In this document: positions 3,901-60,870 of the stretch, piece by piece
How the letters are laid out: each line of letters starts with the position of its first letter
Numbering within the stretch: position 1 is the first letter of the stretch
Origin: Macrostomum lignano
Lineage: Eukaryota
Length of the DNA stretch: 64,000 nt
Reading direction: 5' to 3'
NCBI GenBank assembly: GCA_002269645.1
Contig: NIVC01000245.1
Coordinates: 496,001 to 560,000, forward strand
Notes under the pieces: generated by a model
Database searches by the model: none
What the model was told of the DNA's origin: nothing
The model's input: only the letters and a program-made list of their open reading frames with translations
Translations under genes and position numbers: made by a program

Positions 3901-6720
3901 TCTTGAGGACGTATCTGAAATTTTCAAGAGCGGGCATGTGAGTGGATTGTCTCGCACTTTTACACTCCAATTTTCTCACGTACCGAAAGTTCAATTTAGA
4001 AGCCAGATATTTAAGGATATCTGGAGCCATTCCATATCCTTTGTAAAAATTATCGCCCAGATCTTCAATTAAACCGGCGGACGGAAAATCCTTGAAAAAA
4101 ACAAGAAATTGGCTTAAGTCCTCTCGATTTAAAAAATAAAATTTGTGATATTTTTACGAAATTATTACCATAGGACAGCAAACGACCAACGTAGCATTCT
4201 TGAACCCGGTGAAGGTGTTGGGAAACACGAATGCACCGCCGCTCTTGTGGAACAATTTCCTCAACGAGCCGCTGCTGAACCGACCGCTCAGCTCGAACCG
4301 AGCTGCCACTCCCGACTGCTCGGTGAATGACGCAACGATCTCAACGCCCTGAGCGTTGAAGAATCCTGTTGTCGAGTTGTAGGAAATCTCACCGCGACCC
4401 GAGTCGAAGCTCGATAGCTGAGATGAGACAGAGTGGCGAGTGCAACTGCTCACATCTGTGATCAGTTAACGATGAGCAGTAAAATGCACAATAAAGTGAG
4501 CAGCGAGCACGAACTCACAGACATGACTTTGCTGAGCACTTGAGCACCAGACGACCACGGCTGCAGAGGAAAGCATGACGCGTTGCTCTCTCGGAATCCT
4601 GGCTGAGTCAGCGAGTCTGTGAGAGCCTTCGCCAGAGCCTCGATCGCATCCACGAGACGGATGTCCAGTGTCTGTGCGAGATTTCGGTTGATAGGAGATC
4701 GAGTACATATAGTTATGTGAGTGAGTGAGCTTTGATGCTCTCAGTGTGTTGGTGATTGAGCAAGGTAGGGCAGGGCAGGGCAGGGAAGGGCAGGGCAGGG
4801 CAGGGCAGTGCAGGGCAGGGCAGGGCAGGGCAGGGCAGGGCAGGGCAGGGCAGGGCAGGGCAGGGCAGGGCAGGGCAGGGCAGGGCAGGGCAGGGCAGGG
4901 CAGGGCAGGGCAGGGCAGGGCAGGGCAGGGCAGGGCAGGGCAGGGCAGGGCAGGGCAGGGCAGGGCAGGGCAGGGCAGGGCAGGGCAGGGCAGGGCAGGG
5001 CAGGGCAGGGCAGGGCAGGGCAGGGCAGGGCAGGGCAGGGCAGGGCAGGGCAGGGCAGGGCAGGGCAGGGCAGGGCAGGGCAGGGCAGGGCAGGGCAGGG
5101 CAGGGCAGGGCACGGCAGGGCACAGCACGGCAGCTGGCGCTCACCCGAATGCTGTCGGTGTCGCAGCTCGGAAAGACGTCTCTCACTGCAGGCGGACAGT
5201 CCGATGGCCGATTGACGCCAGTTGTGCCTCCTCTGAACAGAGCCAGGTTGCAGCTGTTGGGACACACCCGCATCAGGTGGGACTTGCTGAGTCCGCCGCT
5301 GTCAATCACGAGCCAGAAGTAGTTCTGCTGCATGACGCTGGAGTTCGCAGCGGCTGCCGCGATGCTTTGCACGTTGCGAGGCGTCGCCATGACGATGGCG
5401 TTGAACAGGCGCTTCTTCATGAGGCGTCTGAGCTTCTCGGAGAGAAGATCTCCGCTGAGTGTGGGGTCGACATTGAAAGGGACGGAGCTGATGCCGATGC
5501 TTGACAGTTGCGTCTGCAGCAGCTGTATGAAGCCATTCTCTGTGAGATAAGAAATGTAGAGTGGAATTTGAGTTACAGTTCTATTAACTAATTACTACGA
5601 GCTATTAATCGCAGCAGCATCATAAAAATACTTGTAGTTATTAAATTAGCAATTACCGTTGGATGAGTCGTACAAAATGGCCACTTGTTTTTCATCCAGG
5701 GTCGAGATGACTTCGGCTGCAGCGCCGATAACCTCAGACACTGAGTGACTGCCAATGACCCCGTACCCTAAAGGGTCAATAGCTTGTGTTTTTCGAATTG
5801 CATTGGAAAATATTTTTCGCAATTGGTGATTTAGTAAGTGTAACTTACTGTGTCACGGTCACAGGTTTGTTAGAAGGAACCCTAGGAACACTTAGTTATC
5901 ACAGAATATTTTGTGCTTTGTTATAGTCTAGTGTAGTCTAGTAGTCTCTTTTTTATCGGAAACATCTTGAAAGAGAAAGAGCGGTAAAAATAGCCCGAGA
6001 AAATGACTTCATAAAACATTATTTGTCAGTAATTTTAGCTTACTTGAGTTATTTTTCGAAAATTAACCGAACTCCGATAGATTTCATGATTTTTCACTGT
6101 TACTCACGAAAATATCCCTCCTCGCACAGAGCGGTTGGCAGGGCGATGAACGGCAGTTGCAGGGACTTGGACAGCGAGCTCAGGTCCGAGAGGAGACCGC
6201 AGCTGCCGATTGCCAGAAGTGCTGACAGACCTGACTGGGAGCAAACTAAAATCGCGAGTGGCTAACACTTTTGATATGTTGGATTCCGTTGACCCATAAG
6301 CATAAAGATGCGACGCTTACTTTCTTGATCACTATCACTATTAATTCGGCATGGGCAAAGTGGAGTTGGGTCCTCATGAGCGCCAAACTCATCATCAAAC
6401 TTGACGCCGGTTTTGTGCCCGAGAACCCCAACTTTCATAACGATGTGACTACAGTTACAGACTAGTTTCAACCGCCTAAATCTAGGATACTCACCTTTTT
6501 TAGCAGCCTGCTGAGCTCCATCCGCGGACACCTGCACAATTGCATGCGACATTGAGTGGCCTGGCAACAGTCTCCAGTTTGAGTTCACCCGTCTGCTCAC
6601 AGCCAGATCAATGAGGGAGCTGCTCACTGCATTCTGCTCAATCACAACTGCCAGCTTGAAGTCCAGGCCAGAGGTGGCTGACATTGAATTCAACAGTAAG
6701 ACAAAAGTGGTCAGTTTCAT
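907..6720 (-). CDS. Ionotropic glutamate receptor-like protein, paralog A; complete, 12 exons, about 832 aa (signal peptide, ATD, S1, M1, pore loop, M3, S2, M4)
   Basis: Hand-spliced exons on the minus strand: 6720-6495, 6245-6108, 5767-5657, 5539-5145, 4671-4519, 4417-4169, 4090-3984, 3914-3821, 3585-3168, 3070-2874, 2080-1917, 1153-907. Phases are compatible throughout, total 2499 nt, no internal stop. Motifs: QVAILYD (ATD), PDILKYLASKLNFRY and PYDGEWG (S1), FTKTTVRDTVIDFS, GSFMQQG pore, WWFFNVIIYAAYTAFLTSFLT (M3), hydrophobic M4. All introns are GT-AG. Subfamily not assignable by eye. Confidence 0.92.
2555..2622 (+). repeat. Degenerate (TTAGGG)n interstitial telomere-like repeat, about 11 units, in intron 10 of A
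   Basis: ttagggttagggtcatggttaagattagggttaggtttagggttaaggttagggtgagggttagggtt read directly from the sequence. Confidence 0.8.
2745..2841 (+). mobile_element. Helitron-like 3' end (weak hairpin + CTAG) fused to a short Helitron 5' fragment, in intron 10 of A
   Basis: ctgCTAG|TCCTATAAACCAAAAATGG...GTGATCGATTTCAGAAAAAAACGGCTCAA matches the 5' ends of the Helitron units at 37029, 39710 and 59756. Confidence 0.6.
4767..5133 (-). repeat. (CCCTG)n / (GGGCA)n pentanucleotide array, about 70 copies, intron 4 of A
   Basis: Near-perfect 5-mer array starting about 12-15 nt after the exon 4 donor site. Confidence 0.97.
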
Positions 6721-14958: not shown

Positions 14959-17900
14959 ATGTTGCCGATAGCATCGGTGCTATTGGCATGCTTTGTGTCA
15001 GCCACCTCTGGCCTGGACTTCAAGCTGGCAGTTGTGATTGAGCAGAATGCAGTGAGCAGCTCCCTAATCGACCTGGCTGTGAGCAGACGGGTGAACTCGA
15101 ACTGGAGACTGTTGCCAGGCCACTCAATGTCGCATGCGATCGTGCAGGTATCCAAGGATGGAGCTCAGCAGGCTGCTAAGGAGGGTGAGTAGCTTGGCTG
15201 CAAGCATGCCATGCTTGAGTAAATTAGATTTAAAATTATTCGTTTGGTTAGTCTGACGCAATTATTGAATATCTATACATTTGGGTTGTGGTTGTAGTTT
15301 TGACTATTGTCTTTTATTGTGCTCGAAATACATGAGAGTAAGGGTAAGCGTTAGCTTAACTCAATTCCAGTGTGCTCTCAGTCCAGTCTGTCAGCTCTTC
15401 TGGCAATCGGCAGCTGCGGTCTCCTCTCGGACCTGAGCTCGCTGTCCAAGTCCCTGCAACTGCCGTTCATCGCCCTTCCAACCGCTCTGTGCAGCAGCAC
15501 ACATTTTCGTGAGTAAAGTTAAATCATGAGTGTTAAACAGACTTGTTTATCTTACATTCTGTACAGTTAGCAGCTTTCAATTTTGGCTATCATTACAAGC
15601 GAAGTAAATCAAGTAAGGAATGGATTTTCTCTTGTAAATTGATTGACAGTTATAAAAAGTGTTTACTAACTACAATCGTATTTTATTACTGACTACCAAG
15701 AGTTATCCCACAAAAGTCTGATTTGACAGCAATAGACTTGACATTAACAGTTGATATTCAGGCTATTAATGTCAGACAATTGTTCTGTCTGTGGTAATCA
15801 AATGGGAACACCTATTTATCGATTTATCAAAATCGATATGCATATCATATAGCTGCAATAATACCAGTCAATATTTCTCTCGTTCTAAAATAAGATGCGA
15901 AAATAACTTTTTCTGATGTCATGTACTTTTAGAGTTTCAGAAGTTTCAGACTTTAATATTGTGCAGAGATACTTTATTATTTCCTTGCAGACTACGGCGC
16001 TGTTGGTAGCCACAGGGTGACTGAACTACTGGAAGCAACCGTTAAAACAATTTCAACACTTGAGGAAAAAAGAGGTCATCATATTTTACGACATGTCTCA
16101 GGGTAAGCTTGGAAAATCTAATATATTAAACAGTAATGCACAGGGATCCTTTCACTAGTAATATTTGCCCTCTTCACTTTTGGGGCAACAAAGAAAAGAA
16201 TATTTTTCTGAATAAAATGTAGATTTTGAAATTTCACAGGCAACAACTGCTAGTTTTTTTAGGAAAATGAAAGCCTGAAAGCCAGCTTATTAGCAATTCC
16301 CCCATAAATCTTTTGTGTTTGACATGTCTCCTCTTCTTTTGTGCTCGGCATGACGATGTTTCTCCCAACTTTCCCATCCTATTTGTCTCATCGTTCGCGC
16401 TTTCAGTCAGCGCAGCCTTCTTTGAATACATAATTTGCGATTGCTTTGTTTAATGAGCTCCAAACTGTTGGGAAGTCATTTCAGGCTACAAAGAGACTTT
16501 AAAAATTAGCTAGCTTTTAGTTAGCAAGCAAGATCAAAGAGGACTTCTTTCGTCCATTGAATTGCATATCGATTCATTAGTTCGCCCTTTAGAGCAACTC
16601 CGAGCTATTTATATTTCAAAGAAAGCAAGCATCCTGACGCCACGATGACTGACTACTTGAGTTCGTGTGTACTATAAGACAAGTCGATTTCAGCCTCTGA
16701 AATGATGCAACTGTATTATTGATAATAGTGCCAGCTAGCAGAAGCTAACAAAGATTAAGCTTTGCTAGTCTAGGAATAACTAAATGAACCCTGACACTAA
16801 GGAAGCTACTGAGACACCAAGGCTCAGACGAGCTTGTTATCAGTCGTAAAGCCTTTTCTTGTCTTCTTCATCTTCTTATGGTCTGAAAAGCTAACAGTAG
16901 TGACTATGCTCGTGTTCACAACTTATAGCGTGCAGTTTGTACTTTTTCCCAATAACTACGCTCTTATTAAAGAACACTGAAGAGTTTTAATAAGCCGTCC
17001 ATGCTTTGTCAATGATTAACTTCCCAAAGAAGCTACATGTAAGTAAGACTAGTCTAAGGTACCAAGACAGAATACCACGTCCGGGAAAACTATTCGAGAC
17101 AAGGTTCTAAGCATGCGGCCCGTTTTGACCTTAAAACTTGATGCAAAATTCGCGTACACTTGTGCAGACACTATTATTTATCTAATTTCAAAGAGAATGG
17201 CTTCATACAGCTGCTGCAGACGCGACTCTCGAGCATCGGCATCAGCTCCGTCCCTTTTAACGCCGACCCCACGCTCAGCGGAGATCTTCTCTCCGAGAGG
17301 CTCAGACGCCTCATGAAGAAGCGCCTGTTCAACGCCATCGTCATGGCGACGCCTCGCAACGCGCAAAGCATCGTGGCAGCCGCTGCGAACGCCAGCGTCA
17401 TGCAGCAGAACTACTTCTGGCTCGTGATTGACAGCGGCGGACTCAGCAAGTCCCACCTGATGAGGGTGTGTCCCAACAACTGCAACCTGGCTCTGCTCAG
17501 AGGAGGCACAACTGGCGTCAATTCGGGTGAGCGCCAGCTGCCCTGCCCTGCCCTGCCCTGCCCTGCCGATCTTGCTAAAATACCTTTTGATCTCTCATTT
17601 CTTGCATTTTCTTCCATTTGTCGTTTAGTAATTGTAGGTAATTCTTCCTGTCATTGACATTACAAGCCTGTAGAAAAAAGGCTATTACTTAGTAACTCAT
17701 TTGATCTCGTTATTATATTATGACGCCAACATGATACAGTCTACACTGACTTTTCTCGAAAAAAATTGTCTATGGCCATTGACTACCTCCAAAAACAGTC
17801 TCTACCTATGCCAAGACAAGGAATTCTAAATCCAAGACTAAATCTAAATTTAGAATTTTTTGACCAAGACTGTGTGCTATTGTCTCTCTAGACAATAGAC

Positions 17901-18470
17901 TTTTAGACTATAGGGAAACTATTCAATCACATACACTCACAGAAGAATATTCCAATAATACTCGATCTCCCATCAACCGAAATCTCGCACAGACACTGGA
18001 CATCCGTCTCGTGGATGCGATCGAGGCTCTGGCGAAGGCTTTCACAGACTCGCTGGCTCAGCCGGGATTCCAAGAGAGCAACGCATCATGCTTTCCTCTG
18101 CAGCCGTGGTCGTCTGGCGCTCAAGTGCTCAGCAAAATCATGTCTGTGAGTTCGTGCTCGCAGCATTTGACAGCCCACTTTATTGTACATTCCACTGCTC
18201 ATCATTAACTGATCTCAGATATGAGCAGTTGCAGTCGCCGCTGTCTCATTTCAGCTATCGAGCTTCGACTCGGGTCGCGGTGAGATTTCCTACAACTCGA
18301 CAACAGGATTCTTCAACGCTCAGGGCGTTGAGATCGTTGCATCATTCACTGAGCAGGTGGGAGCGGCAGCTCGGTTCCAGCTGAGCGGTCGGTTCAGCAG
18401 CGGCTCGCTGACGAAATTGTTTCAGAAGAGCGGCGGTGCATTTGTGTTTCCCAACACCTTCACAGGGTGA
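14959..18470 (+). pseudogene. iGluR-like paralog C: exons 1-6 only (signal peptide + ATD), ending in an in-frame TGA; carries a +1 nt lesion (exon 3) and a -62 nt lesion (exon 4)
   Basis: Exons 14959-15184, 15371-15508, 15991-16102 (112 nt versus 111 in A/B; extra A near 16065-16071), 17194-17526 (333 nt versus 395), 17993-18145, 18255-18470 (...FPNTFTG*). Default reading is a pseudogene; possible rescue by cryptic acceptors is covered in findings. Confidence 0.85.
17541..17565 (+). repeat. (CCCTG)5 in intron 4 of C; same site as the arrays in A and B
   Basis: gtgagcgccagctg followed by ccctg x5. Confidence 0.9.
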
Positions 18471-20720
18471 TGTTCGATCGATTTTTTGCAGTTTTTGGAC
18501 AACCTGCCTTTGGGCGAAACATTTTCAGAGGTTTTTATGAAAGTTTTTATTGTACTTTTAGCCCATGCTGGTATTTAGTTGGCTTATTTCCCACTCGCGG
18601 CTTCTTTCGACAACAATTTTATCGATCAAGTTTTTAGATTGTGTCGCACCTGCTATTATGCAAGTGTATCAACGACCAGTGAAGGAATTACGACCGTATA
18701 ATTATAAGTTTAAAAGTTCTAGTATTGAACCAAAAATTGAGCTGCAAAGCCAAAGCGAGCGACGTGGAAACAGAGGGCGGCGTGCAGATAAATAAGCGGG
18801 TGAGCAGCCCCCACCCCACAGAGGGGTAGAAAGGACGGCGCACAAAGGCGGCACAATGTACAGCGCGAGGGGTGGATGGCTAACACCATTTCACTCCAGG
18901 CTCACAAAGGATCAAAAAAAGATCACAAAAAGTGATCGAAACACTAAAACGGACAATGGTTTATCCGTTTAATCTTTCTATGACAAAATATAGCCGTGTT
19001 ATGCGTAAAATCACGGAAGTAGATTAAATTTATTAACTTGAAATGGCTTATTGGCACTGATCATTTTCTAAATAACTCACTTATATGAGTCACAAAAATC
19101 GCACTTTATTCGTGTACTCTAAAGTTAATAATCTTTGTACTCGTATCTTTTTTCAGCTTTAATTTCTTCACCCATTTGACTAATAAATTTGACTAAATTT
19201 TTTACGAAGAGCTACCGTACGCTCGTACATACCCAGCATCTGAACTAGTTTTATTCAACTGAAATGAACAATTAAGATTTTTCCATACGACTCCTTCCTA
19301 TCACTTGACGAAAACCGTGTATATGACGGGTACAAACATTTCTGCAAGTACCGCGGTTGCATCTAGGTTTTTATTAAACTTAATTTATGATAAGAAGAAT
19401 TAAAATATAGCTAGTAGAAACACTAGAATTCCTGATATGGAACAAACTACTGATTAAAATATCATTAGTAGCAACCGAAGCTACATTTTCTCAAAATTTC
19501 ACACACCAACTATGGACAACTGTGTGATTGCCCATTCAATCGATAAAATAGCTCTTCTGCTATTTATAATCGATATAATCTATAATCATCTGCAATGCAT
19601 GTAACTCTTCGGCTGCTTCTGCCCACTTCGTGAGGGCTACTACAATTACTCCCAATAATTTTAAGGTAAATATCTCTAAACCCTTTTCTCCATAGCACTT
19701 TCAAACGTAGCTTGCGAATTAGCATACATGTATCTTCACAAATTTTCATTCTTTGAATTGTAGTCTTGGATAAGAAAAAAGTTCTTATGAAACAGCAACT
19801 TTCTACAATACTACAGAGCTCGTACAGAGCGACACTAACGTCTTGAGAGTGACAGCCTTTAGCTTTAGTACAAGATGTGCAGCAGAATACTCCGTAGAGA
19901 GTTGCAAGCGTTTTTACGTGTTTTTGTTGCTCGATTTTACGCAAGTTCTGTGTTGGATTTTGGGTAGCTCATGTATCAAATAAAAGGAAAACTATATCAG
20001 AGTGATTTAGATTGCATTGTTTGATTGCCTCTGTATTGTGTTTCAATAGAAGGACTTAATAAACTTGTTCAAAGTAATGCCAGTCATAGCTGGGTGATTC
20101 AGTAGTCACAGACGGTCATTCTGCTGGGTCGACCCTACTGTTCGCGCAGCAGTCCAGCCGCTTCAGTCTCGCCAGCACCAACTCGCCAGCCAGCAGGAGC
20201 AGACCGACAGCAAAGAAGCAGCCGGTGACAACAAAGCAGCCGGCCACCGTGTCCAGACCGATTGACTCGGCGCCAGTGTAGCTCGCGTCACTATCGCCTT
20301 CGCTGCACTGGTCATCAGAGTCGGTCTTGTAATACTTGTCGAATAGCAGCTGGAGCTGACCGGTCTCGCTGAGTTTGCTCAGACTGAAAAATAGGTACAG
20401 TTTGTTTAAATTTGGTGCAAATTTGATTTTGCAGTGCTGCGGATGCACAGGGAGTTATAATTTGCGAAAAAATGCAGCAATGTTTCAATGCGTTATGAAA
20501 ATTTCAAAAACAAATAAGGAACCGCTCAATTTTCTTAAAAAATTCAGATGCTGGAAAATACAAGAAATGACGATTGCTACGGAGAACCACAGAACACGGA
20601 GAAAGTAAAAAAACAATTAAAGAACCAACAATCAATTCTGGCTACTTTTAAAGACCACAAACATGAAAGCAAAATAAGTGCGGTTAAAAGAGCAGAAGCT
20701 ATCATAAAGCAATTTTAAAG
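18466..20720. repeat. Segmental duplication, copy 1 (partner: 28683-30493 plus 49570-49683)
   Basis: Collinear diverged matches, e.g. gtgatgttcgatcgattttttgcag / gtgatgttcagtcgatttttgaag; caagtgtatcaacgaccagtgaagga / caagtgtgtcaatgaccactgaagga; exon 12 of B versus D; intron 11 of B versus D. Confidence 0.85.
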
Positions 20721-23700
20721 CATTAAAAATCCGCGCCTAGGTATTGCATCACGACAGCTTTTAAAGTGCTCGTAAAAGCAAAAGGCATACTCCCTCTGCG
20801 TCTTACTAAAAGTCCACCGCCGGACCGTATATGGCGTCCTCGGGATAAGTGAACGCTACGGTTGCCGCGTTGAACAAATCGTCAGCTACGTACGCCTTCT
20901 TGCAGTTGGACCGGGCAACGAAACGCATCCGGGAAGCGTCGCCAAGACAAGCTACGCTACCAGTTTCCAGAGTCTGAAAATGTTTTGACAGAAGGTTAAA
21001 CGTGCTAAATATCCTGCATCAATGACTACTGAATCAAACGACTGCGCACCTCGTACGGACAGTTCGGCGCGTCCAGAAGCAGGCCTCCAATTTCGCCGTA
21101 GATGCCAGAGTCGGACGACTTCATCAACTGGTGAGCGCTGGTGCCGGGTATGGCTCCGGGTCTGATGGCAGTCTGGGAGGCCAAGTCCTCCAGCGTTTTT
21201 ATTGGTAGCTGGGTCACACTTACCGTCAGCATTGAGGTCAGAAACGCTGTGATATGGAAGATAAGCAAGAATTGCAAGTTTTTACTCATTTAAATGATTT
21301 ACCACTCGCACCCCGAGCTCACCAGTGTAGGCCGCATACACAATCACTTGGAAGAAGAACCAGAATGCCAGAGAAACTCTTGGCGACGTGGCGAACGGAT
21401 AAAAGTCCTGGCCCTGCTGCATGAAACAGCCAGTGACGCACCACAGGTATTCGAAGTAGCTGATCTCGTCACGGATCGAGTACTCGAGTTGCAGATTGTA
21501 GGCTGAGAACGGAGAGTAGTAAGCCATGATCCAGACGAAGAATGCGGCCACAAACAGAGAGGCAGCCAGACACAGCCACAGCTGCCACGTCAATGGAAAG
21601 AAAACATTCCACATCTTGGTGGCCGGCTTTGGTTTCGGAACCAGGATGGCGTGGTATTCAGCGAAGAGCGCGGCGGAGTAGTCGATCACGGCGTCACGAA
21701 CAGTTGTCTTGGTGAATAATCCAGCTCCAAGGCTAACAATCTAGAAAAAGAGAAATTATGGTTTGCCCTCCTAAAACGGTATAAAAAGACACTACAAATT
21801 AAACAAAATGTTCTCACGTCTTGCTGCAGCTCTCCAATGCAGCCAGTGAAAAATGGCGAGCCTGCAACGGGAGCGCCCGGCTGGCCGTCCGAGGGCCTCT
21901 TCAAAATATACCTGCATCGGTATCGTTTGACGTGACCGTTAGTATTGCTTTTTATGTAGACTTTATAATAAGTAAAACAATTTATTTGTTACTTGAGCTC
22001 CTTTCCTGTGCAATCCTTAGGTCTCTCCGAACACCTTGGTAATCGCTGAACTTGGCAACGACACATTTATTGGAAGTGGCTTCGTTCCTGATTTGGTGGA
22101 ATACCTTTCGAAGAAGTTAAACTTTCGGTATGCTTTTTATTTTAAACAGTTAACGTACAGTCGGAGCACAAATCATAATTGTAGCATTGTTGAACCCCGT
22201 GAAGGTGTTGGGAAACACGAATTCAGCGCCGCTCTTGTGGAACAGTTTCGTCAGCGAGCCGCTGCTGAACCGACCGCTCAGCTCGAACCGAGCTGCCGCT
22301 CCCACCTGCTCAGTAAATGACGCAACGATCTCGACGCCCTGAGAGTTGAAGAATCCTGTTGTCGAGTTGTAGGAAATCTCACCGCGACCCGAGTCGAAGC
22401 TCGATAGCTGAAATGAGACAGAGTGGCGAGTGCAACTGCTCAAATACCTGTAGACCTGTTAATAATGAGCAATGAAATAAGCGTCGAAGTGAGCAAAAAC
22501 GCTGCAATGAAAAAATCAAATGCAGAAACCAAAAACTCACAGACATGACATTGCTGAGCACTTGAGCGCCAGACGACCACGGCTGCAGGGGAAAGCATGA
22601 CGCGTTGCTCTCTCGGAATCCCGGCTGAGTCAGCGAGTCTGTGAGAGCCTTCGCCAGAGCCTCGATCGCATCCACGAGACGGATGTCCAGTGTCTGTGCG
22701 AGATTTCGGTTGATGTTAGATCGAGTATTAATGTGAGCACAGTTACACTGCTGCTGACTATTACTGCTCAAATAGATTCAGAGCAAATCGAGCAGAGCAA
22801 AGCAGGGCAGGGCAGGGCAGGGCAGGGCAGGGCAGGGCAGGGCAGGGCAGGGCAGGGCAGGGCAGGGCAGGGCAGGGCAGGGCAGGGCAGGGCAGGGCAG
22901 GGCAGGGCAGGGCAGGGCAGGGCAGGGCAGGGCAGGGCAGGACAGGCAGGGCAGGGCAGGGCAGGGCAGGGCAGGGCAGGGCAGGGCAGGGCAGGGCAGG
23001 GCAGGGCAGGGCAGGGCAGGGCAGGGCAGGGCAGGGCAGGGCAGGGCAGGGCAGGGCAGGGCAGGGCAGGGCAGGCAGGGCAGGGCAGGCAGGGCAGGGC
23101 AGGGCAGGGCAGGGCAGGGCAGGGCAGGGCAGGGCAGGGCAGGGCAGGGCAGGGCAGGGCAGGGCAGGGCAGGGCAGGGCAGGGCAGGGCAGGGCAGGGC
23201 AGGGCAGCTGGCGCTCACCCGAATGCTGTCGGTGTCGCAGCTCGGAAAGACGTCTCTCACTGCAGGCGGACAGTCCGATGGCCGATTGACGCCAGTTGTG
23301 CCTCCTCTGAGCAGAGCCAGGTTGCAGTTGTTGGGACACACCCTCATCAGGTGGGACTTGCTGAGTCCGCCGCTGTCAATCACGAGCCAGAAGTAGTTCT
23401 GCTGCATGACGCTGGCGTTCGCAGCGGCTGCCACGATGCTTTGCGCGTTGCGAGGCGTCGCCATGACGATGGCGTTGAACAGGCGCTTCTTCATGAGGCG
23501 TCTGAGCCTCTCGGAGAGAAGATCTCCGCTGAGCGTGGGGTCGGCGTTGAAAGGGACGGAGCTGATGCCGATGCTCGAGAGTCGCGATTGCAGCGATTCT
23601 AAAACTCTTCCTCCTGCAAATATTTGGAAAAGTTTGAGGAACTTTGGAATTTATTCATGTCACCTATACTGAGTAGTCACAATCATGATTTAATAGTATT

Positions 23701-25134
23701 TTGACACTACCTACCATTTGTCTGGTCATACAAAATTGCAATCTCTTCCGCTCGAGTGGACTCCATTACAGAAATTGCTGCGTCCAGAATCACAGATGTT
23801 TCGTGGTTGCCGAAGACCCCAAATGCTGCGGGTTAAATATGATAGCTTTGTGGAGTCAAACAAGCCTCTTTTCTTTATTAAAGACAAAAAGTCTCTTTGA
23901 AGTGGGTGCGCCTGTTGGTCTCTGTTTCCTTGTTCAAAACAGTCAGACACTGGACCTGCCGTTTATTATATTCTTGTTGTCAGAATCGCTGTCAACACGG
24001 AAATTTCTCTCGGCTGATCAATTCAAATCAGACTAGAAATTATTTTGACATGGCATGCAAACCTCCGCTTGCTTGATACTTGATACGACTTAGTGCGATG
24101 CTAAGCTTGAATCGTTTAGGAAGTTGTTGGAGCATTCCCTCTTTGGTTACTCTTCTGATTTTTCAAGCGAACTGGATGTTAGCAATAGCATTGACCACTC
24201 GACTGCTCACGAAGTTTAGTGGGGCTGCACAGAGCGGTTGGCAGGGCGATGAACGGCAGTTGCAGCGACTTGGCTAGCGAGCTCAGCTCCGTGACGAGAC
24301 CGCAGCTGCCGATTGCCAGTAGAGCTGACAGACCATCCTGAGAGCACACTGGAATGGCGAGTAACATAGAGGATATTTAGCTGGGACGGAGCCGAGGAAA
24401 AGAATGGGTCAAAAACAAGCAGTATCGGCCAACTAGAGCTCGAAAATACACTTTTACTCGTACATTATTTTAGCAGCAGTTGAATTTTTAGAGAAGACTG
24501 CTGACGATACAAAAATTTGGGAGTAAGTAGATAGCTTGTGGGGTACAGGTGTAGTAAGTATAATAGAGTTAATTATATAAAAGGATTCCAATTTTACACA
24601 ACAAATGCAGGTTAAGCATTGATGTTTTCGACTGCCATTGGACTCACTGCTAATCATCAAGGCTAATGTTGGTGGGTTGGATCTTATCAACCCGCTAGTA
24701 TACTCGGTTAATATAATGTAGGTGAAATTGTAATGCAAGCTTAGTGAAGTTTCTCGGAGCAAAATACAATCGAGTGCAATCCTAGATGCGCACTGGTGCT
24801 ACCAAAAAAATTTAAGGACTCGTAGGGGTGTCGAAGTTCCGGAACGTACCAAGCCCTGTGGAATTGAGTCTCTGAAGTGATAGCAAACAAAATAGCTCAG
24901 TCATTCACCTTCTTTAGCAGCCTGCTGAGCTCCATCCGCGGGCACCTGCACGATTGTGTGCGACATTGAGTGGCCTGGCAACAGTCTCCAGTTCGAGTTC
25001 ACCCGTCTGCTCACAGCCAGGTCGATGAGAGATTCATTTACAGCATTCTGCTCAATCACAACTGTCAGATTGAACTCCAGGCCTGAGGTGGCGGATGTTA
25101 AGTACAGAAAAAGAAAATATTGTAACAGCTTCAT
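20116..25134 (-). CDS. Ionotropic glutamate receptor-like paralog B; 12 intact exons (840 aa if all are joined), but exon 7 is on the opposite strand, so status is unresolved (recent pseudogene, trans-spliced, polymorphic inversion or misassembly)
   Basis: Minus-strand exons: 25134-24909, 24348-24211, 23825-23715, 23613-23219, 22693-22541, 22407-22159, [exon 7 on + at 22021-22127], 21911-21818, 21740-21323, 21246-21050, 20973-20807, 20383-20116. Exon sizes and phases match A. Motifs FTKTTVRDAVIDYS, GCFMQQG, AYTAFLTSMLT. No stops in any exon. Confidence 0.85.
22021..22127 (+). CDS. Inverted exon 7 of paralog B (start of the S1 ligand-binding lobe)
   Basis: ccttag|GTC TCT CCG ... AAC TTT CG|gtatgc. 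It is 107 nt, phase 0 to 2, exactly like exon 7 of A. VSPNTLVIAELGNDTFIGSGFVPDLVEYLSKKLNF aligns without gaps to DFPSAGLIEDLGDNFYKGYGMAPDILKYLASKLNF (14/35 identical). Confidence 0.93.
22803..23207 (-). repeat. (CCCTG)n / (GGGCA)n array, about 80 copies, intron 4 of B
   Basis: Read directly; same intronic position as in A and C. Confidence 0.97.
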
Positions 25135-26189: not shown

Positions 26190-26690
26190 CGAGGGACACT
26201 AAAAAAGCCCACTGCTGCTGGACTTTCTGCCGCACAAGCAGACAGTCACGGGTGCCTACTACGCCGATCTGATTGCCCTCAAGGCCTCAAGGCAATCAAG
26301 GAGAATCGGCGGGGAGTGCTGAGCCGTGGTGTAGTGCTGCTGCAGACCAACACACCTGCCCACACCAGTGGACTGACAAAGACAGCAGCTGTCAGCGTAT
26401 CAGAGCTGCCACAACCCTACCTATTCACCAGACCTTGCCCCCAGCGAATTTCACAGCTGTTTCCGCATCTCAAGCGGGCACTCCGTGGGCAGCGATTTAA
26501 CACTGATGATGCACCGGAGGATGCTGCGACCTCCTGGATCGAGGGGTGCTCAACGCAGTTTTTCAGAGTGGTATCGAAGCACTGCGATCAAAATGTCACA
26601 AAAGTGCATCTTGGTAGAAAAAAGCTGGTTGTATTTGCCCCAATTCTCTCTCCGTCACACCGAGGCTCAGAACCTTTTCAGTGCCCCTCG
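26190..26690 (+). mobile_element. Internally deleted mariner (Tc1/mariner) element, 501 bp, TA target duplication
   Basis: TA|CGAGGGACACTAAAAAAG ... CCTTTTCAGTGCCCCTCG|TA termini. Frameshifted transposase C-terminal motifs: LLDFLPHKQTVTGAYYADL, RGVVLLQTNTPAHTS, YSPDLAPS-like, LFPHLKRALRGQRF. Confidence 0.9.
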
Positions 26691-27149
26691 TATATAAGTG
26701 AGCGGCCAAGAGATGGCTTCAGAAAGAAAGCTTAAAATGATGGACAGTTTTGTTGCTCATATTTGTCCAGGACTACTGATTTCAAGGGACGGGGAACTAG
26801 CGAGATCAAAGTTTTTTAAAAAAGCTGACAGATACCTCTGACTTACCTCGATAAAATTCGGAAGTGCAATACTTCATTTCTCACGTTTGCTTTTATCTTT
26901 TGGCTCGTGAAGGCTCGGACGGTCTGCTTCTTTGATAAACGTTCATTTTGTTTGAAGCCAGACACGCAGTCTGATCAGCGTGTAGCTGGTGTGTAGAAGA
27001 AGTTTATCGGAAGCTGAATTCAGTAGTTAAGAAGACTAAAAGATTTTGTGCTATATGTGTGAACCGATAGGAAAAAATTAAAACATTGCAGCCTCTAGAA
27101 CTTTTCTCCATTAATCGCTAGTTTCCTCTCTAATAATGAATAATGATAA

Positions 27150-28186: not shown

Positions 28187-28686
28187 ATGGACAATAACAA
28201 CAAGGTCGCTTGCATGGGTGACGTAGCACTGATCGAATACCTGGTGCAAATGAACTGCAGTCGCTGGTACTTATAGTCAAGGAAGTTTTCAACGCCGCGA
28301 CTGTGGCCTTCATAATGCCAGAGGATGCTGTGTACGGAAAGGCTGTCAACTACTATAGTAAGCGAATTTTCATTTATCGATGACGACTACGCACGTAGAG
28401 CTTTGATCAGTCAAAAAGGTTGGTCGCAACCCTGCAAATTTTATTCAGCATGCACCAACTACACGAGGCAGGCCAGATCCCGATGCTGAAACAGAGATAC
28501 TTCCAGCCGGAGACTGGTGCGGCCTGTGTCAGAAGAACCTCGAGCAACGCTGGGTCCGTCGATGCGATTAATTTAGGCATTGTGGCGGGTCCGTATGCGG
28601 TAGCCGGCTGTTTCTACGCGATGGGCTTGGCGCTGCTTGCTGGAGAATTCGTGGCAGCCCGGCGGCTTCACCCTTCACCGACGTGA
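28187..28686 (+). pseudogene. iGluR-like 3' remnant C': exon 11 (28187-28357; two 2-nt TA insertions, in-frame stop) and exon 12 (28429-28686)
   Basis: VACMGDVALIEYLVQMNCSRWY / EVFNAATVAFIMPEDAVYG is homologous to exon 11 of A and B. The exon is 171 nt versus 167 in B. Exon 12 encodes M4 and a stop. No exons 8-10 were found on the plus strand upstream. Confidence 0.85.
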
Positions 28687-29930
28687 TGTTCAGTCGATTT
28701 TTGAAGATTTTGGAGAACCTACTTTTGGCGAAAAAATTGGCAAGTGTGTCAATGACCACTGAAGGATTTATAAGCTGAAATCTTTAGTATCTAAAGTAGC
28801 GTGGATCACTAAAAATATAAAACGCATTTTCCATCAAATATTTTCATGAGGCAATAGCTGTGTTAGTACGAGTACTCGAAATAGGTATTTTGTATAAAAT
28901 GACGAAATGAACTTGCATTGGTTGACGTGAAGCGGCGTATTGACACTTATAAATTTTCTATAAAGTAACTCACTTATATCTACCAATCTAAATTTTCCTC
29001 TCCCTATTTGTATGCTCTGAATTTGTAAATGCGGCTATAGCCTATATCTATTATAAGCCTTGTTTTCTCAATTAAGCCTACTAAGATTTCATTAGTAGAA
29101 TCTCTCATGAAGCAGGCGCATGCTTGCAGCCTCTGCTCGGGTTTAAAAAGCCATTTTAAGCAGCTTCAATTCAATAATTCTACTAGCTAATAAATTTGAC
29201 TAATTTCTTAACAGTTACTTACTCAGCATCTTAGCTGGTTTGAATGCGGTTTGTTGCATCAGTACGAGTCCTCTCTATCACTTTGACCCAAATCTATATG
29301 GCCCAGATTGAAGCAAAATTTCTGCAAATACCGCGGTTTTTATAAGTAGCTATAATATAAAAACGAAGAATTCCTGATTGAAAGCAAACTACTGATTAAA
29401 TTATCTTAAGTAGAAAGGAGAAAAAGGATTCCTACTAAAAAGCTCAGCAATTAATTATGGGCGACTTTTATGATTACCTGATTAAAAAAACGATTTTAAA
29501 ATAGCTAGCTAGTTCTCTTCTGCCAGAGGCTGAGGTCAGAGACTACTTTGAGTAGTCCCTGGCTGAGGTGTCTCTCACGCCCCATTCCCTATGCACACTT
29601 CAGGTGGGCTACAATTGCTCCCATGAATCATATAAAGGTAAATTTTCTTTTTCAATCCTACGAGTAATTCTCTGAGGCACTTTCAAAACTACCTTGCAAT
29701 TTAGCACTCCTTCACAACATTTGTCAATTGCTTTGAATTGTAGTCTTAGATCAGGGATTCCTGATCATGGAGTATTTGCTTGTATGAGTAAAAAATAAGT
29801 GAAAAAATATATCAGAATGATTTAGATTGCATTGTTTGTTTGACGCTGTGTTGCGTTTCAATAAGAGGACTTAATAAACTTGTTCAAAGTAATGCCAGTC
29901 ATATCTGGGTGATTCAGTAGTCACAGACAT

Positions 29931-30198
29931 TCATTCCGCTGGGTCGACCCGAGTGTTCGCGCAGCAGTCCAGCCGCTTCAGTCTCGCCAGTACTAACTCG
30001 CCAGCCAGCAGAAGCAGACCGACAGCAAAGAAGCAGCCGGTGACAACGAAGCAGCCGGCCACCGTGTCCAGACCGATTGACTCGGCGCCAGAGTAGCTCG
30101 CGTCACTATCGCCTTCGCTGCACTGGTCATCAGAGTCGGGCTTGTTGTACTTGTCGAATAGCAGCTGGAGCTGACCGGTCTCGCTGAGTTTGCTCAGA
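29931..30198 (-). pseudogene. Orphan exon 12 (M4 + C-tail) of paralog D, a duplicate of the 3' end of B
   Basis: Translation is nearly identical to B exon 12 (YYKT>YNKP, T>S, S>T). Intron 11 homology continues to 30493, resumes at 49570-49683, then ends. Confidence 0.88.
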
Positions 30199-30974
30199 CT
30201 GAAAAATAGGTACAGTTTGTTTAACTTTGTCTGTTTAAATTTGGCGTGACTTAAAATTTTGTGCATAGAAATTTATGACAAGGAAAAAACTGCCAAAATG
30301 TTTTGGTATTACTTCAAGAAAACTTTATCAAATTGAACGGTACTTGAAAGGAGAGACATTACCTCGCAAGAAGGCACTGAAGCGTTAGTGAAAGAAAGAT
30401 TTCCATATAAAATTGACTGCCAAGATGGCTATGGAGTAGCCGGATGGAAAGGTAAAAATAATTTAAAGAACTAGCAGTCAACACTAGCTACTATCTAAAT
30501 ATACTAAATCTTCCAATATACTAAAAATGAGTTGTCTGTCGGTATGCGATAGATTTCAAAAAAATTGGCTCAACCGATTTTCTTCAAACTTGCACCATTT
30601 GATCAGAAATTTTCCTGGCACGGTACATGCATCCTGGCTAAGAAATTGCTCAATATTAAAGGGATTAAATATTCGAAAAACATGCTTCTTTGCAAAGGTC
30701 AAGCAGCTCTTTCGACCTGAAATGCATTGTAAGAATGCTAGAGAAAAAACTGACTGACTGAATTCCAATTGTGATAAAGATTACATCACAACCAGTTGAA
30801 AACAGTGCCGAACAAATGCACACAAAACTTGATTTAAATTGCGTAACAATATTGCTAACTTAAATTGAGACTGATACTGGCTGACTGAGAAATTGATTAT
30901 GTCATAACTTTTTACTCTAACCGATTTGCTATAAGAATTTAATTATAAGGGCCACAATTCATGATCTCCAATTG

Positions 30975-31099: not shown

Positions 31100-34000
31100 A
31101 GCACAATGTCAAACATTAAAGAGCCACCATGTCGACCAGTAAAGAGCCACCATGTCGACCATTAAAGAGCCACCATGTCGAACATTAAAGAGCCACCATG
31201 TTCAACATTAAAGAGCCACCATGTCAAACATTAAAGAGCCACCATGTCAAACATTAAAGAGCCACCATGTCGAACATTAAAGAGCCACCATGTCTAACAT
31301 TAAAGAGCCACCATGTCGAAAATTAAAGAGCCACCATGTCTAACATTACAAAGCCACCATTTCAAACATTAAAGAGCCATCATGTCGAACATTAAAGAGC
31401 CACCATGTCTAACATTTAAGAGCCACCATGTCTAACATTAAAAAGCCACCATTTCAAACATTAAAGAGCCATCATGTCGAATATTAAAGAGCCACCATGT
31501 CCAACATATATGTGACTTCATGTCAAACATTAAAGAGCCACCATGTCTAACATTAAAGAGCCACCATTTCAAACATTAAAGAGCCACCATGTCTAACATT
31601 AAAGAGCCACCATGTCAAACATTAAAGAGCCACAATTTCAAACATTAAAGAGCCATCATGTCGAACATTAAAGAGCAACCATGTCTAACATTAAAGAGCA
31701 ACCATGTCTAACATTAAAGAGCCACCATGTCAAACATTAAAGAGCAACCATGTCAAACATAAAAGAGCCACCATGTCGAACATTAAAGAGCCACAATGTA
31801 GAATATTAAAGAGCCACCATGTCAAACATAAAGTGACTTTATGTAAAACATATAAGTGACTTCCTGTCAAACATATAAGTGACTTTTTGTCAAACATTAA
31901 AGAGCCACCATGTCAAACATAAAAGAGCCACCATTTCGAACATTAAAGAGCCACCATTTCGAACATTAAAGAGCCACCATGTCAAACATAAAAGAGCCAC
32001 CATGTCTAACATTAAAGAGCCACCATGTCTAACATTAAAGAGCCACCATGTCTAACATTAAAGAGCCACCATGTTGAACATTAAAGAGCCACCATGTCGA
32101 ACATTAAAGAGCCACGATGTCGAACATTAAAGAGCCACCATGTCGAACATTAAAGAGCCACCATGTCTAACATTAAAGAGCCACCATGTCGAACATTAAA
32201 GAGCCACCATGTAAAAAATAAAAGAGCCACCATGTCGAACATTAAAGAGCCACAATGTAGAATATTAAAGAGCCACCATGTCAAACATAAAGTGACTTTA
32301 TGTAAAACATATAAGTGACTTTATGTAAAACATATAAGTGACTTTATGTAAAACATATAAGTGACTTTATGTAAAACATATAAGTGACTTTCTGTCAAAC
32401 ATATAAGTGACTTTTTGTCAAACATTAAAGAGCCACCATGTCAAACATAAAAGAGCCACCATTTCGAACATTAAAGAGCCACCATTTCGAACATTAAAGA
32501 GCCACCATGTCAAACATAAAAGAGCCACCATGTCTAACATTAAAGAGCCACCATGTCTAACATTAAAGAGCCACCATGTCTAACATTAAAGAGCCACCAT
32601 GTCGAACATTAAAGAGCCACCATGTCTAACATATATGTGACTTCATGTCAAAAATTAAAGAGCCATCGTGTCGAACATTAAAGAGCCACCATGTCTAACA
32701 TTAAAGAGCCACCATGTCTAACATTAAAGAGCCACCTTGTCGAACATTAAAGAGCCACCATGTCGAACATTAAAGAGCCACCATGTCCAAAATTTATGTG
32801 ACTTCATGTCAAACATTAAAGAGCCATCATATCGAACATTAAAGAGCCACCATGTCTAACATTAAAGAGCCACCATGTCGAACATAAAAGGACCACCATG
32901 TCAAACATTAAAGAGCCACCATTTCAAACATTAAAGAGCCATCATTTCGAACATTAAAGAGCCACCATGTCTAACATTAAAGAGCCACCTTGTCGAACAT
33001 TAAAGAGCCACCATGTCGAACATTAAAGAGCCACCATGTCCAAAATTTATGTGACTTCATGTCAAACATTAAAGAGCCATCATGTCGAACATAAAAGAGC
33101 CACCATGTCAAACATAAAAGGACCACCATGTCGAACATTAAAGAGCCACCATGTCTAACATTAAAGAGCCACCATGTCGAACATTAAAGAGCCACCATGT
33201 AAAAAATAAAAGAGCCACCATGTCGAACATTAAAGAGCCACAATGTAGAATATTAAAGAGCCACCATGTCAAACATAAAGTGACTTTATGTAAAACATAT
33301 AAGTGACTTTATGTAAAACATATAAGTGACTTTATGTAAAACATATAAGTGACTTTATGTAAAACATATAAGTGACTTTCTGTCAAACATATAAGTGACT
33401 TTTTGTCAAACATTAAAGAGCCACCATGTCAAACATAAAAGAGCCACCATTTCGAACATTAAAGAGCCACCATTTCGAACATTAAAGAGCCACCATGTCA
33501 AACATAAAAGAGCCACCATGTCTAACATTAAAGAGCCACCATGTCTAACATTAAAGAGCCACCATGTCTAACATTAAAGAGCCACCATGTCGAACATTAA
33601 AGAGCCACCATGTCTAACATATATGTGACTTCATGTCAAAAATTAAAGAGCCATCGTGTCGAACATTAAAGAGCCACCATGTCTAACATTAAAGAGCCAC
33701 CATGTCTAACATTAAAGAGCCACCTTGTCGAACATTAAAGAGCCACCATGTCGAACATTAAAGAGCCACCATGTCCAAAATTTATGTGACTTCATGTCAA
33801 ACATTAAAGAGCCATCATATCGAACATTAAAGAGCCACCATGTCTAACATTAAAGAGCCACCATGTCGAACATAAAAGGACCACCATGTCAAACATTAAA
33901 GAGCCACCATTTCAAACATTAAAGAGCCATCATTTCGAACATTAAAGAGCCACCATGTCTAACATTAAAGAGCCACCTTGTCGAACATTAAAGAGCCACC

Positions 34001-36000: not shown

Positions 36001-36099
36001 GAGACACCATTTCAAACATAAAAAGAAGTGTCATGCCAAACAAAATGGAACCATTATAAAGCTAAGGAAATTGCTGCACTAGCTACTTGTTCTCTGGTG

Positions 36100-36900: not shown

Positions 36901-37028
36901 GGGATGTTTTGTTTTTAAGAGGGAATGTCTGTTGTTTTTTATGAAGGCTTTTTTTGCTGTCTATTTGTTATTTGTAAAGAACAAGGATTCTATCCAGATG
37001 TCCCCCATCGGGGGGCAAAGATTGCTAG

Positions 37029-60781: not shown

Positions 60782-60862
60782 TTAAAGTTAAGGGTAAAAA
60801 CCCATGTTACTTGAGTCGGCCTTAAATGGGTAACGCCAAGCAAAGAAATAGGATTCCAGCCA

Positions 60863-60870
60863 TGACGTCA
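60863..60870. promoter_or_regulatory. Palindromic CRE/ATF consensus TGACGTCA, about 430 bp upstream of the FOXRED2 ATG
   Basis: Perfect 8-mer match only; no functional evidence. Confidence 0.25.

What the first reader, a model, noticed from the sequence alone, without database searches (positions are those of the whole stretch)
21912..22158. An intact exon with its own splice sites lies inverted inside an otherwise perfect receptor gene
Gene B is on the minus strand, but the only exon-7 homolog is on the plus strand at 22021-22127, exactly between exons 6 and 8. It has canonical AG/GT sites, the right length (107 nt), the right phases and no stop. The flanking non-exonic DNA totals 140 bp versus 147 bp for introns 6+7 of A, so it is B's own exon flipped in place. 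Every other B exon remains free of stops and frameshifts. Possible explanations: (1) a very recent or polymorphic micro-inversion that knocks out the channel; (2) trans-splicing from an antisense transcript, as established for Drosophila mod(mdg4); (3) a reversible DNA inversion switching between full channel and ATD-only forms; (4) an assembly error. Options 2 and 3 would be new for iGluRs as far as I know.
Basis: partly seen in the sequence, partly recalled or inferred. Interest (0 to 1): 0.9.

Follow-up and report, generated by a model that had tools for sequence, protein, structure and literature searches.

The report
Exon flipped inside flatworm glutamate-receptor gene
One 107-base exon of a glutamate-receptor gene copy in the flatworm Macrostomum lignano sits backwards between its neighbouring exons; this is most likely a very young small inversion that has just broken one copy of a multi-copy gene, not a new way of making the protein.

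Summary
Gene B (minus strand, 25134-20134) is an iGluR paralog of gene A (6720-907). Its only exon-7 homolog lies on the plus strand at 22021-22127. It is 107 nt, has AG/GT sites and fits phases 0/2. With it flipped in, B reads as an unbroken 840-aa iGluR; A gives 841 aa.

The exon is B's own. It is 25/35 identical to exon 7 of B's closest M. lignano paralog, G2, and A, G2 and a related ENA contig all carry exon 7 forward. The window is M. lignano: UniRef models match A and B at 100%. Two older models of B also lack exon 7. One joins exon 6 to exon 8; the other stops just after exon 6.

B sits in a rearrangement-prone cluster with dead fragments (C, D, F), gene conversion of the ATD exons ending about 25 bp from the inversion, and satellites.

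Best reading (about 0.7): a real, very recent in-place micro-inversion. The 247-nt GT...AG interval then splices exon 6 to exon 8, which shifts the frame (457 aa, ATD only).

No flanking inverted repeats support a DNA switch. Rescue by trans-splicing would need two trans junctions and has no supporting evidence, though it is not excluded. Reads and RNA-seq are needed to settle it.

The parts
20134..25134 (-). Gene B: an iGluR paralog with 12 exons (ATD, LBD, channel), intact except for the orientation of exon 7.
   Evidence: Exon map. Pfam finds ANF_receptor, Lig_chan-Glu_bd and Lig_chan.
22159..22407 (-). B exon 6, the last exon of the homogenised ATD cassette. Its donor GTACGT lies at 22158-22153.
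   Evidence: The acceptor is fixed by the M. lignano protein models, which read 'NVMS|LSSFDSG'.
22128..22158 (.). Right flank, 31 nt. It holds exon 7's own donor (GTATGC, plus strand) and exon 6's donor (GTACGT, minus strand). The right breakpoint must lie within 22134-22152.
   Evidence: Read directly from the sequence.
22021..22127 (+). Inverted exon 7, 107 nt. It encodes VSPNTLVIAELGNDTFIGSGFVPDLVEYLSKKLNFR, the start of the S1 ligand-binding segment.
   Evidence: tblastn E = 8e-8 against A's exon 7. 25/35 identical to exon 7 of paralog G2. The Pfam Lig_chan-Glu_bd match starts inside it.
21912..22020 (.). Left flank, 109 nt. On the plus strand it holds the polypyrimidine tract and AG of exon 7. 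On the minus strand it holds a TACTAAC branch-site-like motif (21944-21938) 27 nt before exon 8's AG. The left breakpoint lies somewhere between these.
   Evidence: Read directly from the sequence.
21818..21911 (-). B exon 8. Its acceptor is ...gatgcAG and its donor is GTGAGA.
3984..4090 (-). A exon 7, the reference state: forward orientation, 107 nt, flanked by introns of 78 and 69 nt.
14977..18467 (+). Copy C: an inverted, dead copy of the ATD cassette (exons 1-6). The 3' end of exon 4 is deleted, exon 6 has a 2-nt deletion, and the copy is truncated inside exon 6.

Best explanation
A real, evolutionarily very recent in-place micro-inversion of about 190-235 bp has flipped exon 7 of iGluR paralog B in Macrostomum lignano, together with the inner parts of introns 6 and 7. 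Exon 6's donor and exon 8's branch site and acceptor stayed in place. On the minus strand the whole 247-nt interval is therefore a well-formed GT...TACTAAC...AG intron. The expected default mRNA joins exon 6 to exon 8. Exon 7 is 107 nt, so this shifts the frame and stops after 457 aa (424 aa of signal peptide plus amino-terminal domain, then 33 junk residues). That product is a likely NMD target, or at best a secreted ATD-only protein. B is therefore a nascent pseudogene, or a null or truncated allele, in a gene family with many other copies.

The inversion probably arose from ectopic repair or recombination in a cluster that is visibly unstable. What is shown: the anatomy, the exon's identity as B's own, and that the arrangement is derived. 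What is inferred: the splicing outcome, the recency and the mechanism of origin.
For: (1) Anatomy: only exon 7 is on the opposite strand, and flipping it restores an 840-aa ORF.

(2) The exon is B's own and has not decayed. B-G2 identity is 25/35 for E7, 19/31 for E8 and 111/139 for E9. B-A and G2-A are both 14/35 for E7.

(3) Forward exon 7 is the ancestral state. This holds for A, for the G2 protein models with contiguous E5-E9, and for ENA contig L001, where all eleven exons detected (E3 was not) are collinear on one strand and E7 is 110 nt, the same phase class.

(4) Skipping exon 7 gives a frameshift and a stop at 457 aa. No convincing substitute exon exists on the minus strand.

(5) Two older M. 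lignano UniRef models are B and lack E7. P0005 reads 'ICAPTV|YLKRPSDGQ', which is E6 joined to E8. P0156 is 100% B E5-E6 followed by 'VR*', a read-through of GTACGTTAA.

(6) Recency: 1233 nt of E7-E12 show no stop, frameshift or broken splice site. Under neutrality this becomes unlikely (P < 0.05) beyond roughly 1-2.4% divergence. For comparison, dS is 0.20 between the A and B cassettes and saturated for E7-E12.

(7) Unstable setting: the cluster holds the dead inverted cassette copy C and the fragments D and F. Gene-conversion tracts of 87-99% identity end at about 22181-22194, only 25-35 nt from the inverted segment. A (GGCAG)n array and kilobase-scale satellites lie nearby.
Against: No reads or RNA data could be reached, so the orientation in the animal and the actual splicing are unverified. 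The complete intactness of five downstream exons is also what one would expect if B were still functional through some rescue. B-specific changes in the ATD cassette are 23 synonymous to 39 non-synonymous, roughly dN/dS 0.56, which is not clearly neutral. The two older gene models come from an indel-ridden assembly that may share raw reads with the window's assembly, so they are not fully independent. The breakpoints could only be bracketed, not located.
Confidence: 0.7

Rival explanations
1. The inversion is an assembly artefact, or a variant of one haplotype or homeolog only. On this view the animal carries a normal B with forward exon 7, either everywhere or on another copy of this hidden-polyploid genome.
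For: The M. lignano genome is repeat-rich and redundant, with 180-312 Mb in duplicated blocks (PMC5730564). An inverted paralogous cassette (C) lies 4 kb away. B's exons are perfectly intact.
Against: The flipped piece is bounded within 31 and 109 nt by B-specific unique exons, so any read longer than 0.5 kb spans it. The window's sequence is clean, with no frameshifts. Two older annotation models of B lack E7. I know of no assembler failure that produces a clean 0.2-kb inversion without duplication (own knowledge).
Confidence: 0.13
2. B is still functional. A plus-strand (antisense) transcript supplies exon 7, which is inserted between exons 6 and 8 by two spliceosomal trans-splicing events. 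This would be an internal-exon version of C. elegans eri-6/7.
For: Exon 7 keeps a good polypyrimidine tract with AG and a GT donor, as good as the other sites of A and B. All downstream exons are intact. M. lignano trans-splices a spliced leader onto about 39% of its transcripts, so trans-splicing is routine there (PMC5730564). An inversion repaired by trans-splicing is established for eri-6/7 (PMC11414722). Sense and antisense transcripts would be fully complementary here.
Against: Two trans junctions would be needed, and I know of no metazoan precedent for an internal exon (own knowledge). There are no long flanking direct repeats like the ~930-bp ones of eri-6/7; only 10-12-nt matches exist. 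No plus-strand exon or promoter evidence was found. The only plus-strand neighbour is the dead cassette C. The cis intron from E6 to E8 is well formed and would compete. Intact sites and exons are equally expected from a very young inversion. No protein with B's E6-E7-E8 was found, although those databases are incomplete.
Confidence: 0.05
3. The plus-strand exon is not B's own. On this view it is a remnant of a plus-strand paralog (cassette C upstream, fragment F with E11-E12 downstream), and B lost its own exon 7.
For: On the plus strand the order is C E1-E6 (14977-18467), then E7 (22021-22127), then F E11-E12 (28205-28662).
Against: This would need B's two halves to have been inserted 31 and 109 nt either side of a foreign exon. 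The exon groups with B's closest paralog G2 (25/35), whereas F's E12 is only 39% identical to B's. No plus-strand E8-E10 exist. The spacing fits two ordinary short introns.
Confidence: 0.03
4. A programmed, reversible DNA inversion toggles B between a full channel and an ATD-only form.
For: Only the geometry: a small invertible-looking segment that contains one frame-critical exon.
Against: No inverted repeats bound the segment. The best pair is 12 nt at 83%, has one arm inside exon 8, and implies an impossible ancestral structure (and reasoning in the report). No recombinase-like ORF was seen by eye in the ORF lists of 1-30600 and 59000-64000, the satellite-filled stretch between them not being listed; the only nearby transposase-like ORF, 26316-26735, has no Pfam hit. 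I know of no precedent in animal nuclear genes of this type (own knowledge).
Confidence: 0.01

Closest known systems
Intragenic single-exon (micro-)inversions that cause exon loss or frameshift, as catalogued in disease and cancer genomes (e.g. the inversion classes treated in PMC13484493)
   Same: A whole exon with parts of its flanking introns is reversed. The outer splice sites stay in place. Exon skipping and loss of reading frame are expected.
   Different: This is a germline-genome feature of one paralog in a flatworm gene cluster. The consequence is inferred, not observed.
C. elegans eri-6/7: an inversion of the eri-6 exons, repaired by trans-splicing between transcripts from opposite strands (Fischer & Ruvkun 2008 as cited in PMC11414722)
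   Same: Part of a once-contiguous gene lies on the opposite strand. Relatives keep the contiguous form. The host has an active trans-splicing machinery.
   Different: In eri-6/7 a terminal block of exons is inverted, so one trans junction suffices. It also has its own promoter and ~930-bp flanking direct repeats derived from Polinton TIRs. Here a single internal exon is flipped, so two junctions would be needed, there are no long repeats, and there is no transcript evidence.
Drosophila mod(mdg4) / lola trans-splicing
   Same: Exons on the antisense strand contribute to an mRNA.
   Different: Those loci have common 5' exons and many alternative 3'-terminal exon sets, each with its own promoter. 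Here there is one constitutive internal exon and no alternatives.
Ionotropic glutamate receptor family (ATD-LBD-TMD architecture)
   Same: A and conceptual B have ANF_receptor, Lig_chan-Glu_bd and Lig_chan domains and a YTA(F)L(TS)FLT M3 motif.
   Different: They belong to a lineage-specific M. lignano expansion. The ATD exons are kept 87-99% identical among paralogs, while the LBD and channel exons are old and diverged.

Membership tests
Ionotropic glutamate receptor (iGluR) | Amino-terminal domain of the periplasmic-binding-protein type | tested here: met
   PF01094 ANF_receptor: E = 4e-15 for B and 7e-11 for A.
Ionotropic glutamate receptor (iGluR) | Bipartite ligand-binding domain (S1/S2) and a pore-forming channel domain with the M3 SYTANLAAF-like motif | tested here: met
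   PF10613 and PF00060 both score above their cut-offs in A and in conceptual B. The M3 motif is 'AAYTAFLTSMLT' in B and 'AAYTAFLTSFLT' in A. For B this holds only if exon 7 is flipped in.
Young pseudogene or null allele caused by a micro-inversion | The rearrangement destroys the reading frame of the cis-spliced mRNA | tested here: met
   Joining E6 to E8 gives a frameshift and a stop at 457 aa. Retaining the interval gives a stop after 2 codons.
Young pseudogene or null allele caused by a micro-inversion | Relatives and paralogs show the uninverted state | tested here: met
   A, the G2 protein models and contig L001 all carry E7 forward.
Young pseudogene or null allele caused by a micro-inversion | No mature mRNA contains the inverted exon in the correct position | not testable with these tools
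   No RNA-seq was accessible. Only indirect evidence exists: the older gene models P0005 and P0156 lack E7.
Inversion repaired by trans-splicing (eri-6/7 type) | Part of the gene is encoded on the opposite strand with intact splice sites | tested here: met
   E7 lies on the plus strand with AG and GT sites.
Inversion repaired by trans-splicing (eri-6/7 type) | Long flanking repeats that give inter-transcript pairing (~930 bp in eri-6/7) | tested here: not met
   Only 9-19-nt direct repeats lie within 21700-22400. There are no self-BLAST hits for 21912-22158. Overlapping antisense transcription would itself give pairing, so this feature may not be required here.
Inversion repaired by trans-splicing (eri-6/7 type) | An independent transcript of the inverted part and a chimeric mature mRNA | not testable with these tools
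   No transcript data were accessible. Exact-sequence and homology look-ups found no B protein containing E7.
Site-specific invertible DNA switch | Inverted repeats (recombination sites) at both ends of the invertible segment | tested here: not met
   The best candidate is 12 nt at 83% (21897-21908 / 22138-22149). One arm lies inside exon 8, which is incompatible with a functional forward state.
Site-specific invertible DNA switch | A dedicated recombinase encoded nearby | tested here: inconclusive
   No recombinase-like ORF was noticed by eye in the ORF lists, which cover 1-30600 and 59000-64000 but not the satellite-filled 30600-59000. Pfam was run on only three ORFs outside the receptor genes. 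The transposase-like ORF at 26316-26735 has no Pfam hit.

The most novel reading that the evidence does not exclude
Gene B is still a working channel gene. On this reading, an antisense transcript carrying the flipped exon 7 is stitched between exons 6 and 8 by two trans-splicing reactions, in an animal that already trans-splices a large share of its mRNAs. It would be the first internal-exon, double-junction case of 'inversion repaired by trans-splicing' in a metazoan.
Probability: 0.04. Interest if true: 0.85.

Novelty: new member of a known kind. Interest (0 to 1): 0.32.

Why it matters
If it is what it most likely is, this is a tidy snapshot of gene death by a sub-kilobase inversion, caught before any secondary decay, in a rapidly rearranging receptor cluster. 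That is useful for annotating M. lignano iGluRs, where B should be flagged as disrupted. It also shows how micro-inversions escape exon-by-exon checks.

It would matter much more if RNA data showed B mRNAs containing exon 7. That would extend the eri-6/7 principle, genome inversion compensated by trans-splicing, to an internal exon in a flatworm with abundant spliced-leader trans-splicing.

The locus also shows an unusual pattern that deserves its own look. A near-identical ATD exon cassette is shared by at least six paralogs whose channel halves are anciently diverged.

Tried and rejected
(1) Three word-indexed homology searches. They identified the species and P0003-P0005. They were lossy, though: the junction-specific query returned nothing, even though P0005 shares 33 identical residues with it. 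Absence there carries no weight.

(2) Exact look-ups of window ORFs and of my spliced A and B models, to reach other assemblies or transcripts. None is on record.

(3) Rfam and tRNA scans of the window, for taxon clues or an SL RNA. Nothing was found.

(4) A search for inverted or direct repeats at the inversion edges. Only short matches came up. The 12-nt inverted pair was rejected because it would leave exon 8 without an acceptor in the forward state. The direct repeat TGCTTTTTAT (21946 / 22131) and TCGGTAT (21917 / 22125) may be a breakpoint scar, but I could not show that.

(5) A substitute minus-strand exon inside the 247-nt interval. Only cryptic AG...GT pairs without pyrimidine tracts exist, and they would encode unrelated peptide.

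(6) The idea that two nested large inversions between the inverted cassettes B and C left exon 7 behind. Worked through on paper, this would move exon 7 to the far end of the segment, so I rejected it.

(7) Locating the breakpoints by comparison with A's introns 6 and 7. There is no detectable similarity, because the 3' halves are anciently diverged.

(8) Lineage-specific Ka/Ks on the ATD cassette, to ask whether B is already neutral. This was inconclusive because the cassette is a gene-conversion mosaic.
Full report
**What is in the window.** The window is eukaryotic DNA with short introns. Self-BLAST and tblastn with exon peptides show a cluster of ionotropic glutamate receptor (iGluR) paralogs:
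- Gene A lies on the minus strand, exons E1-E12 from 6720 to 907.
- Gene B lies on the minus strand, from 25134 to 20134.
- Copy C (14977-18467) is a plus-strand partial copy holding only the amino-terminal-domain (ATD) exons E1-E6.
- Fragment F (28205-28662) is a plus-strand piece with E11-E12 of another paralog type.
- Fragment D (about 29715-30243) is a minus-strand copy of B's last exon and 3' flank, 93% identical at the nucleotide level.

Conceptual A and B both carry ANF_receptor, Lig_chan-Glu_bd and Lig_chan domains and an M3 motif, AAYTAFLTS(F/M)LT.

**Species.** Homology searches return only Macrostomum lignano proteins as close hits.
- UniRef model P0154 equals A's E5-E6 exactly.
- P0156 equals B's E5-E6 exactly.
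- P0005 matches B-specific exons at 100% wherever it is in frame.

The window is therefore M. lignano. This genome is more than half repetitive and highly redundant, and a spliced leader is trans-spliced onto about 39% of its transcripts (PMC5730564).

**The observation.** It is correct.
- Every B exon is on the minus strand except exon 7. Its only homolog in the 64 kb is on the plus strand at 22021-22127 (E = 8e-8 against A's exon 7).
- It is 107 nt, the same as A's exon 7 (4090-3984). It is preceded by a pyrimidine tract and AG, followed by GTATGC, and has no stop codon. It fits phase 0 at its start and carries 2 nt into exon 8.
- The flanks are 109 and 31 nt, 140 nt in total. A's introns 6 and 7 are 78 and 69 nt, 147 nt in total.
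- With exon 7 flipped in, and canonical GT-AG at all other junctions, B is one open frame. I first obtained 856 aa.
- The M. lignano protein models all read 'NVMS|LSSFDSG'. This fixes the exon-6 acceptor at 22407 in B and 4417 in A, and gives 840 aa for B and 841 aa for A.
- A few junctions (E3/E4, E10/E11) were picked among alternatives so that the frame stays open. The exons themselves are free of stops and frameshifts.

**Whose exon is it?** An exhaustive HMMER search with B's E6 tail through E9 found B's closest M. lignano paralog, G2 (P0006 and P0158). Its protein models have E5-E6-E7-E8-E9 contiguous.

| Comparison | E7 | E8 | E9 |
|---|---|---|---|
| B vs G2 | 25/35 | 19/31 | 111/139 |
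| B vs A | 14/35 | 18/31 | 96/139 |
| G2 vs A | 14/35 | 22/31 | 91/139 |

The plus-strand exon carries B's own phylogenetic signal, is as conserved as its neighbours, and shows no excess divergence.

Nei-Gojobori estimates give the same picture. E7's dN against A is 0.50, in line with E10-E12 (0.50-0.56), and dS is saturated. E7 therefore belongs to the old, diverged 3' half of B and is not a recent import.

A related contig from an ENA assembly (L001) carries a homologous gene. The eleven exons detected there (E3 was not) lie on one strand in order, and E7 is a separate 110-nt exon of the same phase class. Forward orientation is therefore ancestral, and B's state is derived. Flipped in place is the parsimonious reading.

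**Consequences in cis.** On the minus strand, the interval 22158-21912 begins with GTACGT and ends with ...GATGCAG. A TACTAAC motif sits 27 nt before the AG. It is thus a well-formed 247-nt intron.
- Splicing E6 to E8 shifts the frame and terminates at 457 aa, which is the ATD plus 33 unrelated residues.
- Reading through the donor stops after two codons (VR*).
- No convincing replacement exon exists on the minus strand.
- Exon 7 encodes the start of S1, and the Pfam Lig_chan-Glu_bd match begins inside it. Even an in-frame skip would be unlikely to leave a working ligand-binding domain. This last point is my inference.

**Independent hints.** Two UniRef gene models come from an M. lignano annotation that is not the NCBI Mlig_3_7 one. 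From my own knowledge I believe it rests on the 2015 assembly; no tool result confirms this. Both correspond to B and lack E7.
- P0005 reads ...ICAPTV|YLKRPSDGQ..., which is E6 joined directly to E8. Its frame is kept open only by indels typical of that error-rich assembly.
- P0156 is B's E5-E6 followed by VR and a stop.

This argues that the forward exon was not available to the predictor there either. It is weak evidence, because the assemblies may share reads and the models are fragmentary.

**How old?** E7-E12 amount to 1233 nt of coding sequence, with ten splice sites between them. If they had been unconstrained since the inversion, the chance of no stop, frameshift or splice-site hit falls below 5% once neutral divergence exceeds about 1-2.4% (indel:substitution ratios of 0.05-0.2 assumed). 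For scale:
- dS is 0.20 between the A and B ATD cassettes.
- B and D differ by 7%.
- The youngest conversion tract in the cluster (B-C in exon 4) differs by 1%.

So either the inversion is among the youngest events at the locus, or the downstream exons are still under selection.

**Setting and likely origin.** The ATD exons, introns included, are 87-99% identical among A, B and C. The same near-identical E5-E6 segment (at least 90% identical at the protein level) appears in at least three further M. lignano protein models (P0004, P0155, P0158). The LBD and channel exons are anciently diverged, at 41-69% amino-acid identity with saturated dS.

The homogenised tract ends inside the last 22-35 nt of exon 6, at about 22181 for A-B and about 22194 for B-C. 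That is only 25-35 nt from the inverted segment. C is an inverted copy 4 kb away and shares a 310-bp stretch at 99% with B.

I infer that the flip is a by-product of aberrant ectopic repair or recombination at the edge of a conversion tract. I found no diagnostic breakpoint signature. The segment edges carry only short repeats, and A's introns are too diverged to locate the breakpoints. They can only be bracketed: the right one within 22134-22152, and the left one between about 21945 and about 21990.

**The exotic readings.**
- A reversible DNA switch lacks its defining inverted repeats, and I saw no recombinase-like ORF, although only three ORFs outside the receptor genes were scanned against Pfam.
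- Trans-splicing rescue has a true precedent in C. elegans eri-6/7, where an inverted block of exons is rejoined by trans-splicing with the help of ~930-bp flanking direct repeats (PMC11414722). M. lignano's spliceosome also trans-splices routinely.
- Here, however, an internal exon would need two trans junctions, and there are no long repeats. The only plus-strand neighbour is a dead cassette, and the competing cis intron looks efficient.
- Intact splice sites and exons are expected anyway if the event is young.
- I could not reach any RNA data, so this reading stays open at a few percent.

**Verdict.** The most likely meaning is a very recent micro-inversion that has just disabled, or truncated to an ATD-only product, one paralog in an unstable iGluR cluster of M. 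lignano. This is a known kind of event, and the catch is a good one. Interest is modest unless RNA evidence shows mRNAs from B that contain exon 7.

Noticed in passing
A 6720-4191, B 25134-22181, C 14977-18467: Concerted evolution of an 'ATD cassette'. Exons 1-6 with their introns are 87-99% identical among A, B and C. The E5-E6 part recurs in at least three more M. lignano protein models (P0004, P0155, P0158). The LBD and channel exons E7-E12 are anciently diverged, with saturated dS. Exon 3 is an exception, at only 38% amino-acid identity between A and B. The tract always ends in the last ~20-35 nt of exon 6.
   Followed up: partly
17213-17522 (+) vs 23594-23285 (-): B and the dead copy C are inverted repeats, 99% identical over 310 bp, and they bracket B's exons 7-12. 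Recombination between them would flip the whole 3.7-kb 3' half of B onto the other cassette. This would not correct exon 7's relative orientation.
   Followed up: partly
4767-5133, 22802-23207, 17538-17567: A (GGCAG)n microsatellite of ~73-82 copies sits inside intron 4 of A and B, with a short remnant in C where the 3' end of exon 4 is deleted. It creates long spurious ORFs in several frames. It may be why the UniRef models of these genes start at exon 5.
   Followed up: partly
7566-9134; 31102-49185 and 60352-60781; 50698-58972; 36238-36861: Four tandem-repeat families, with units of 52, 23, 24 and 18 bp, fill about 28 kb of the window. The 23-bp array alone spans 18 kb.
   Followed up: no
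29715-30243 (-) and 28205-28662 (+): There are two orphan iGluR 3' fragments. D is a copy of B's exon 12 plus acceptor and 3' flank. It has an intact ORF and 7 synonymous to 4 non-synonymous differences from B, which looks constrained, yet no upstream exons were found. F holds exons 11-12 of a different paralog type on the other strand, so F and D are convergent like C and B.
   Followed up: partly
61304-62710 (+): An intronless 468-aa ORF has a strong Pyr_redox_3 / FAD-NAD(P)-binding match (E = 1e-44). The exact product is not on record in the contig collection.
   Followed up: partly
P0155 (UniRef A0A1I8H7C9), not in the window: Another M. lignano paralog model also ends by reading through the exon-6 donor ('...ICAPSVRKANINF'). 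This may be an annotation habit, or a sign that further copies lack a usable exon 7.
   Followed up: no
26316-26735 (+): This ORF has a mariner/Tc1-like look by eye, but it has no Pfam hit. Contig L001 from the related assembly carries DDE_3 and Tc3 transposase genes next to its iGluR gene.
   Followed up: partly
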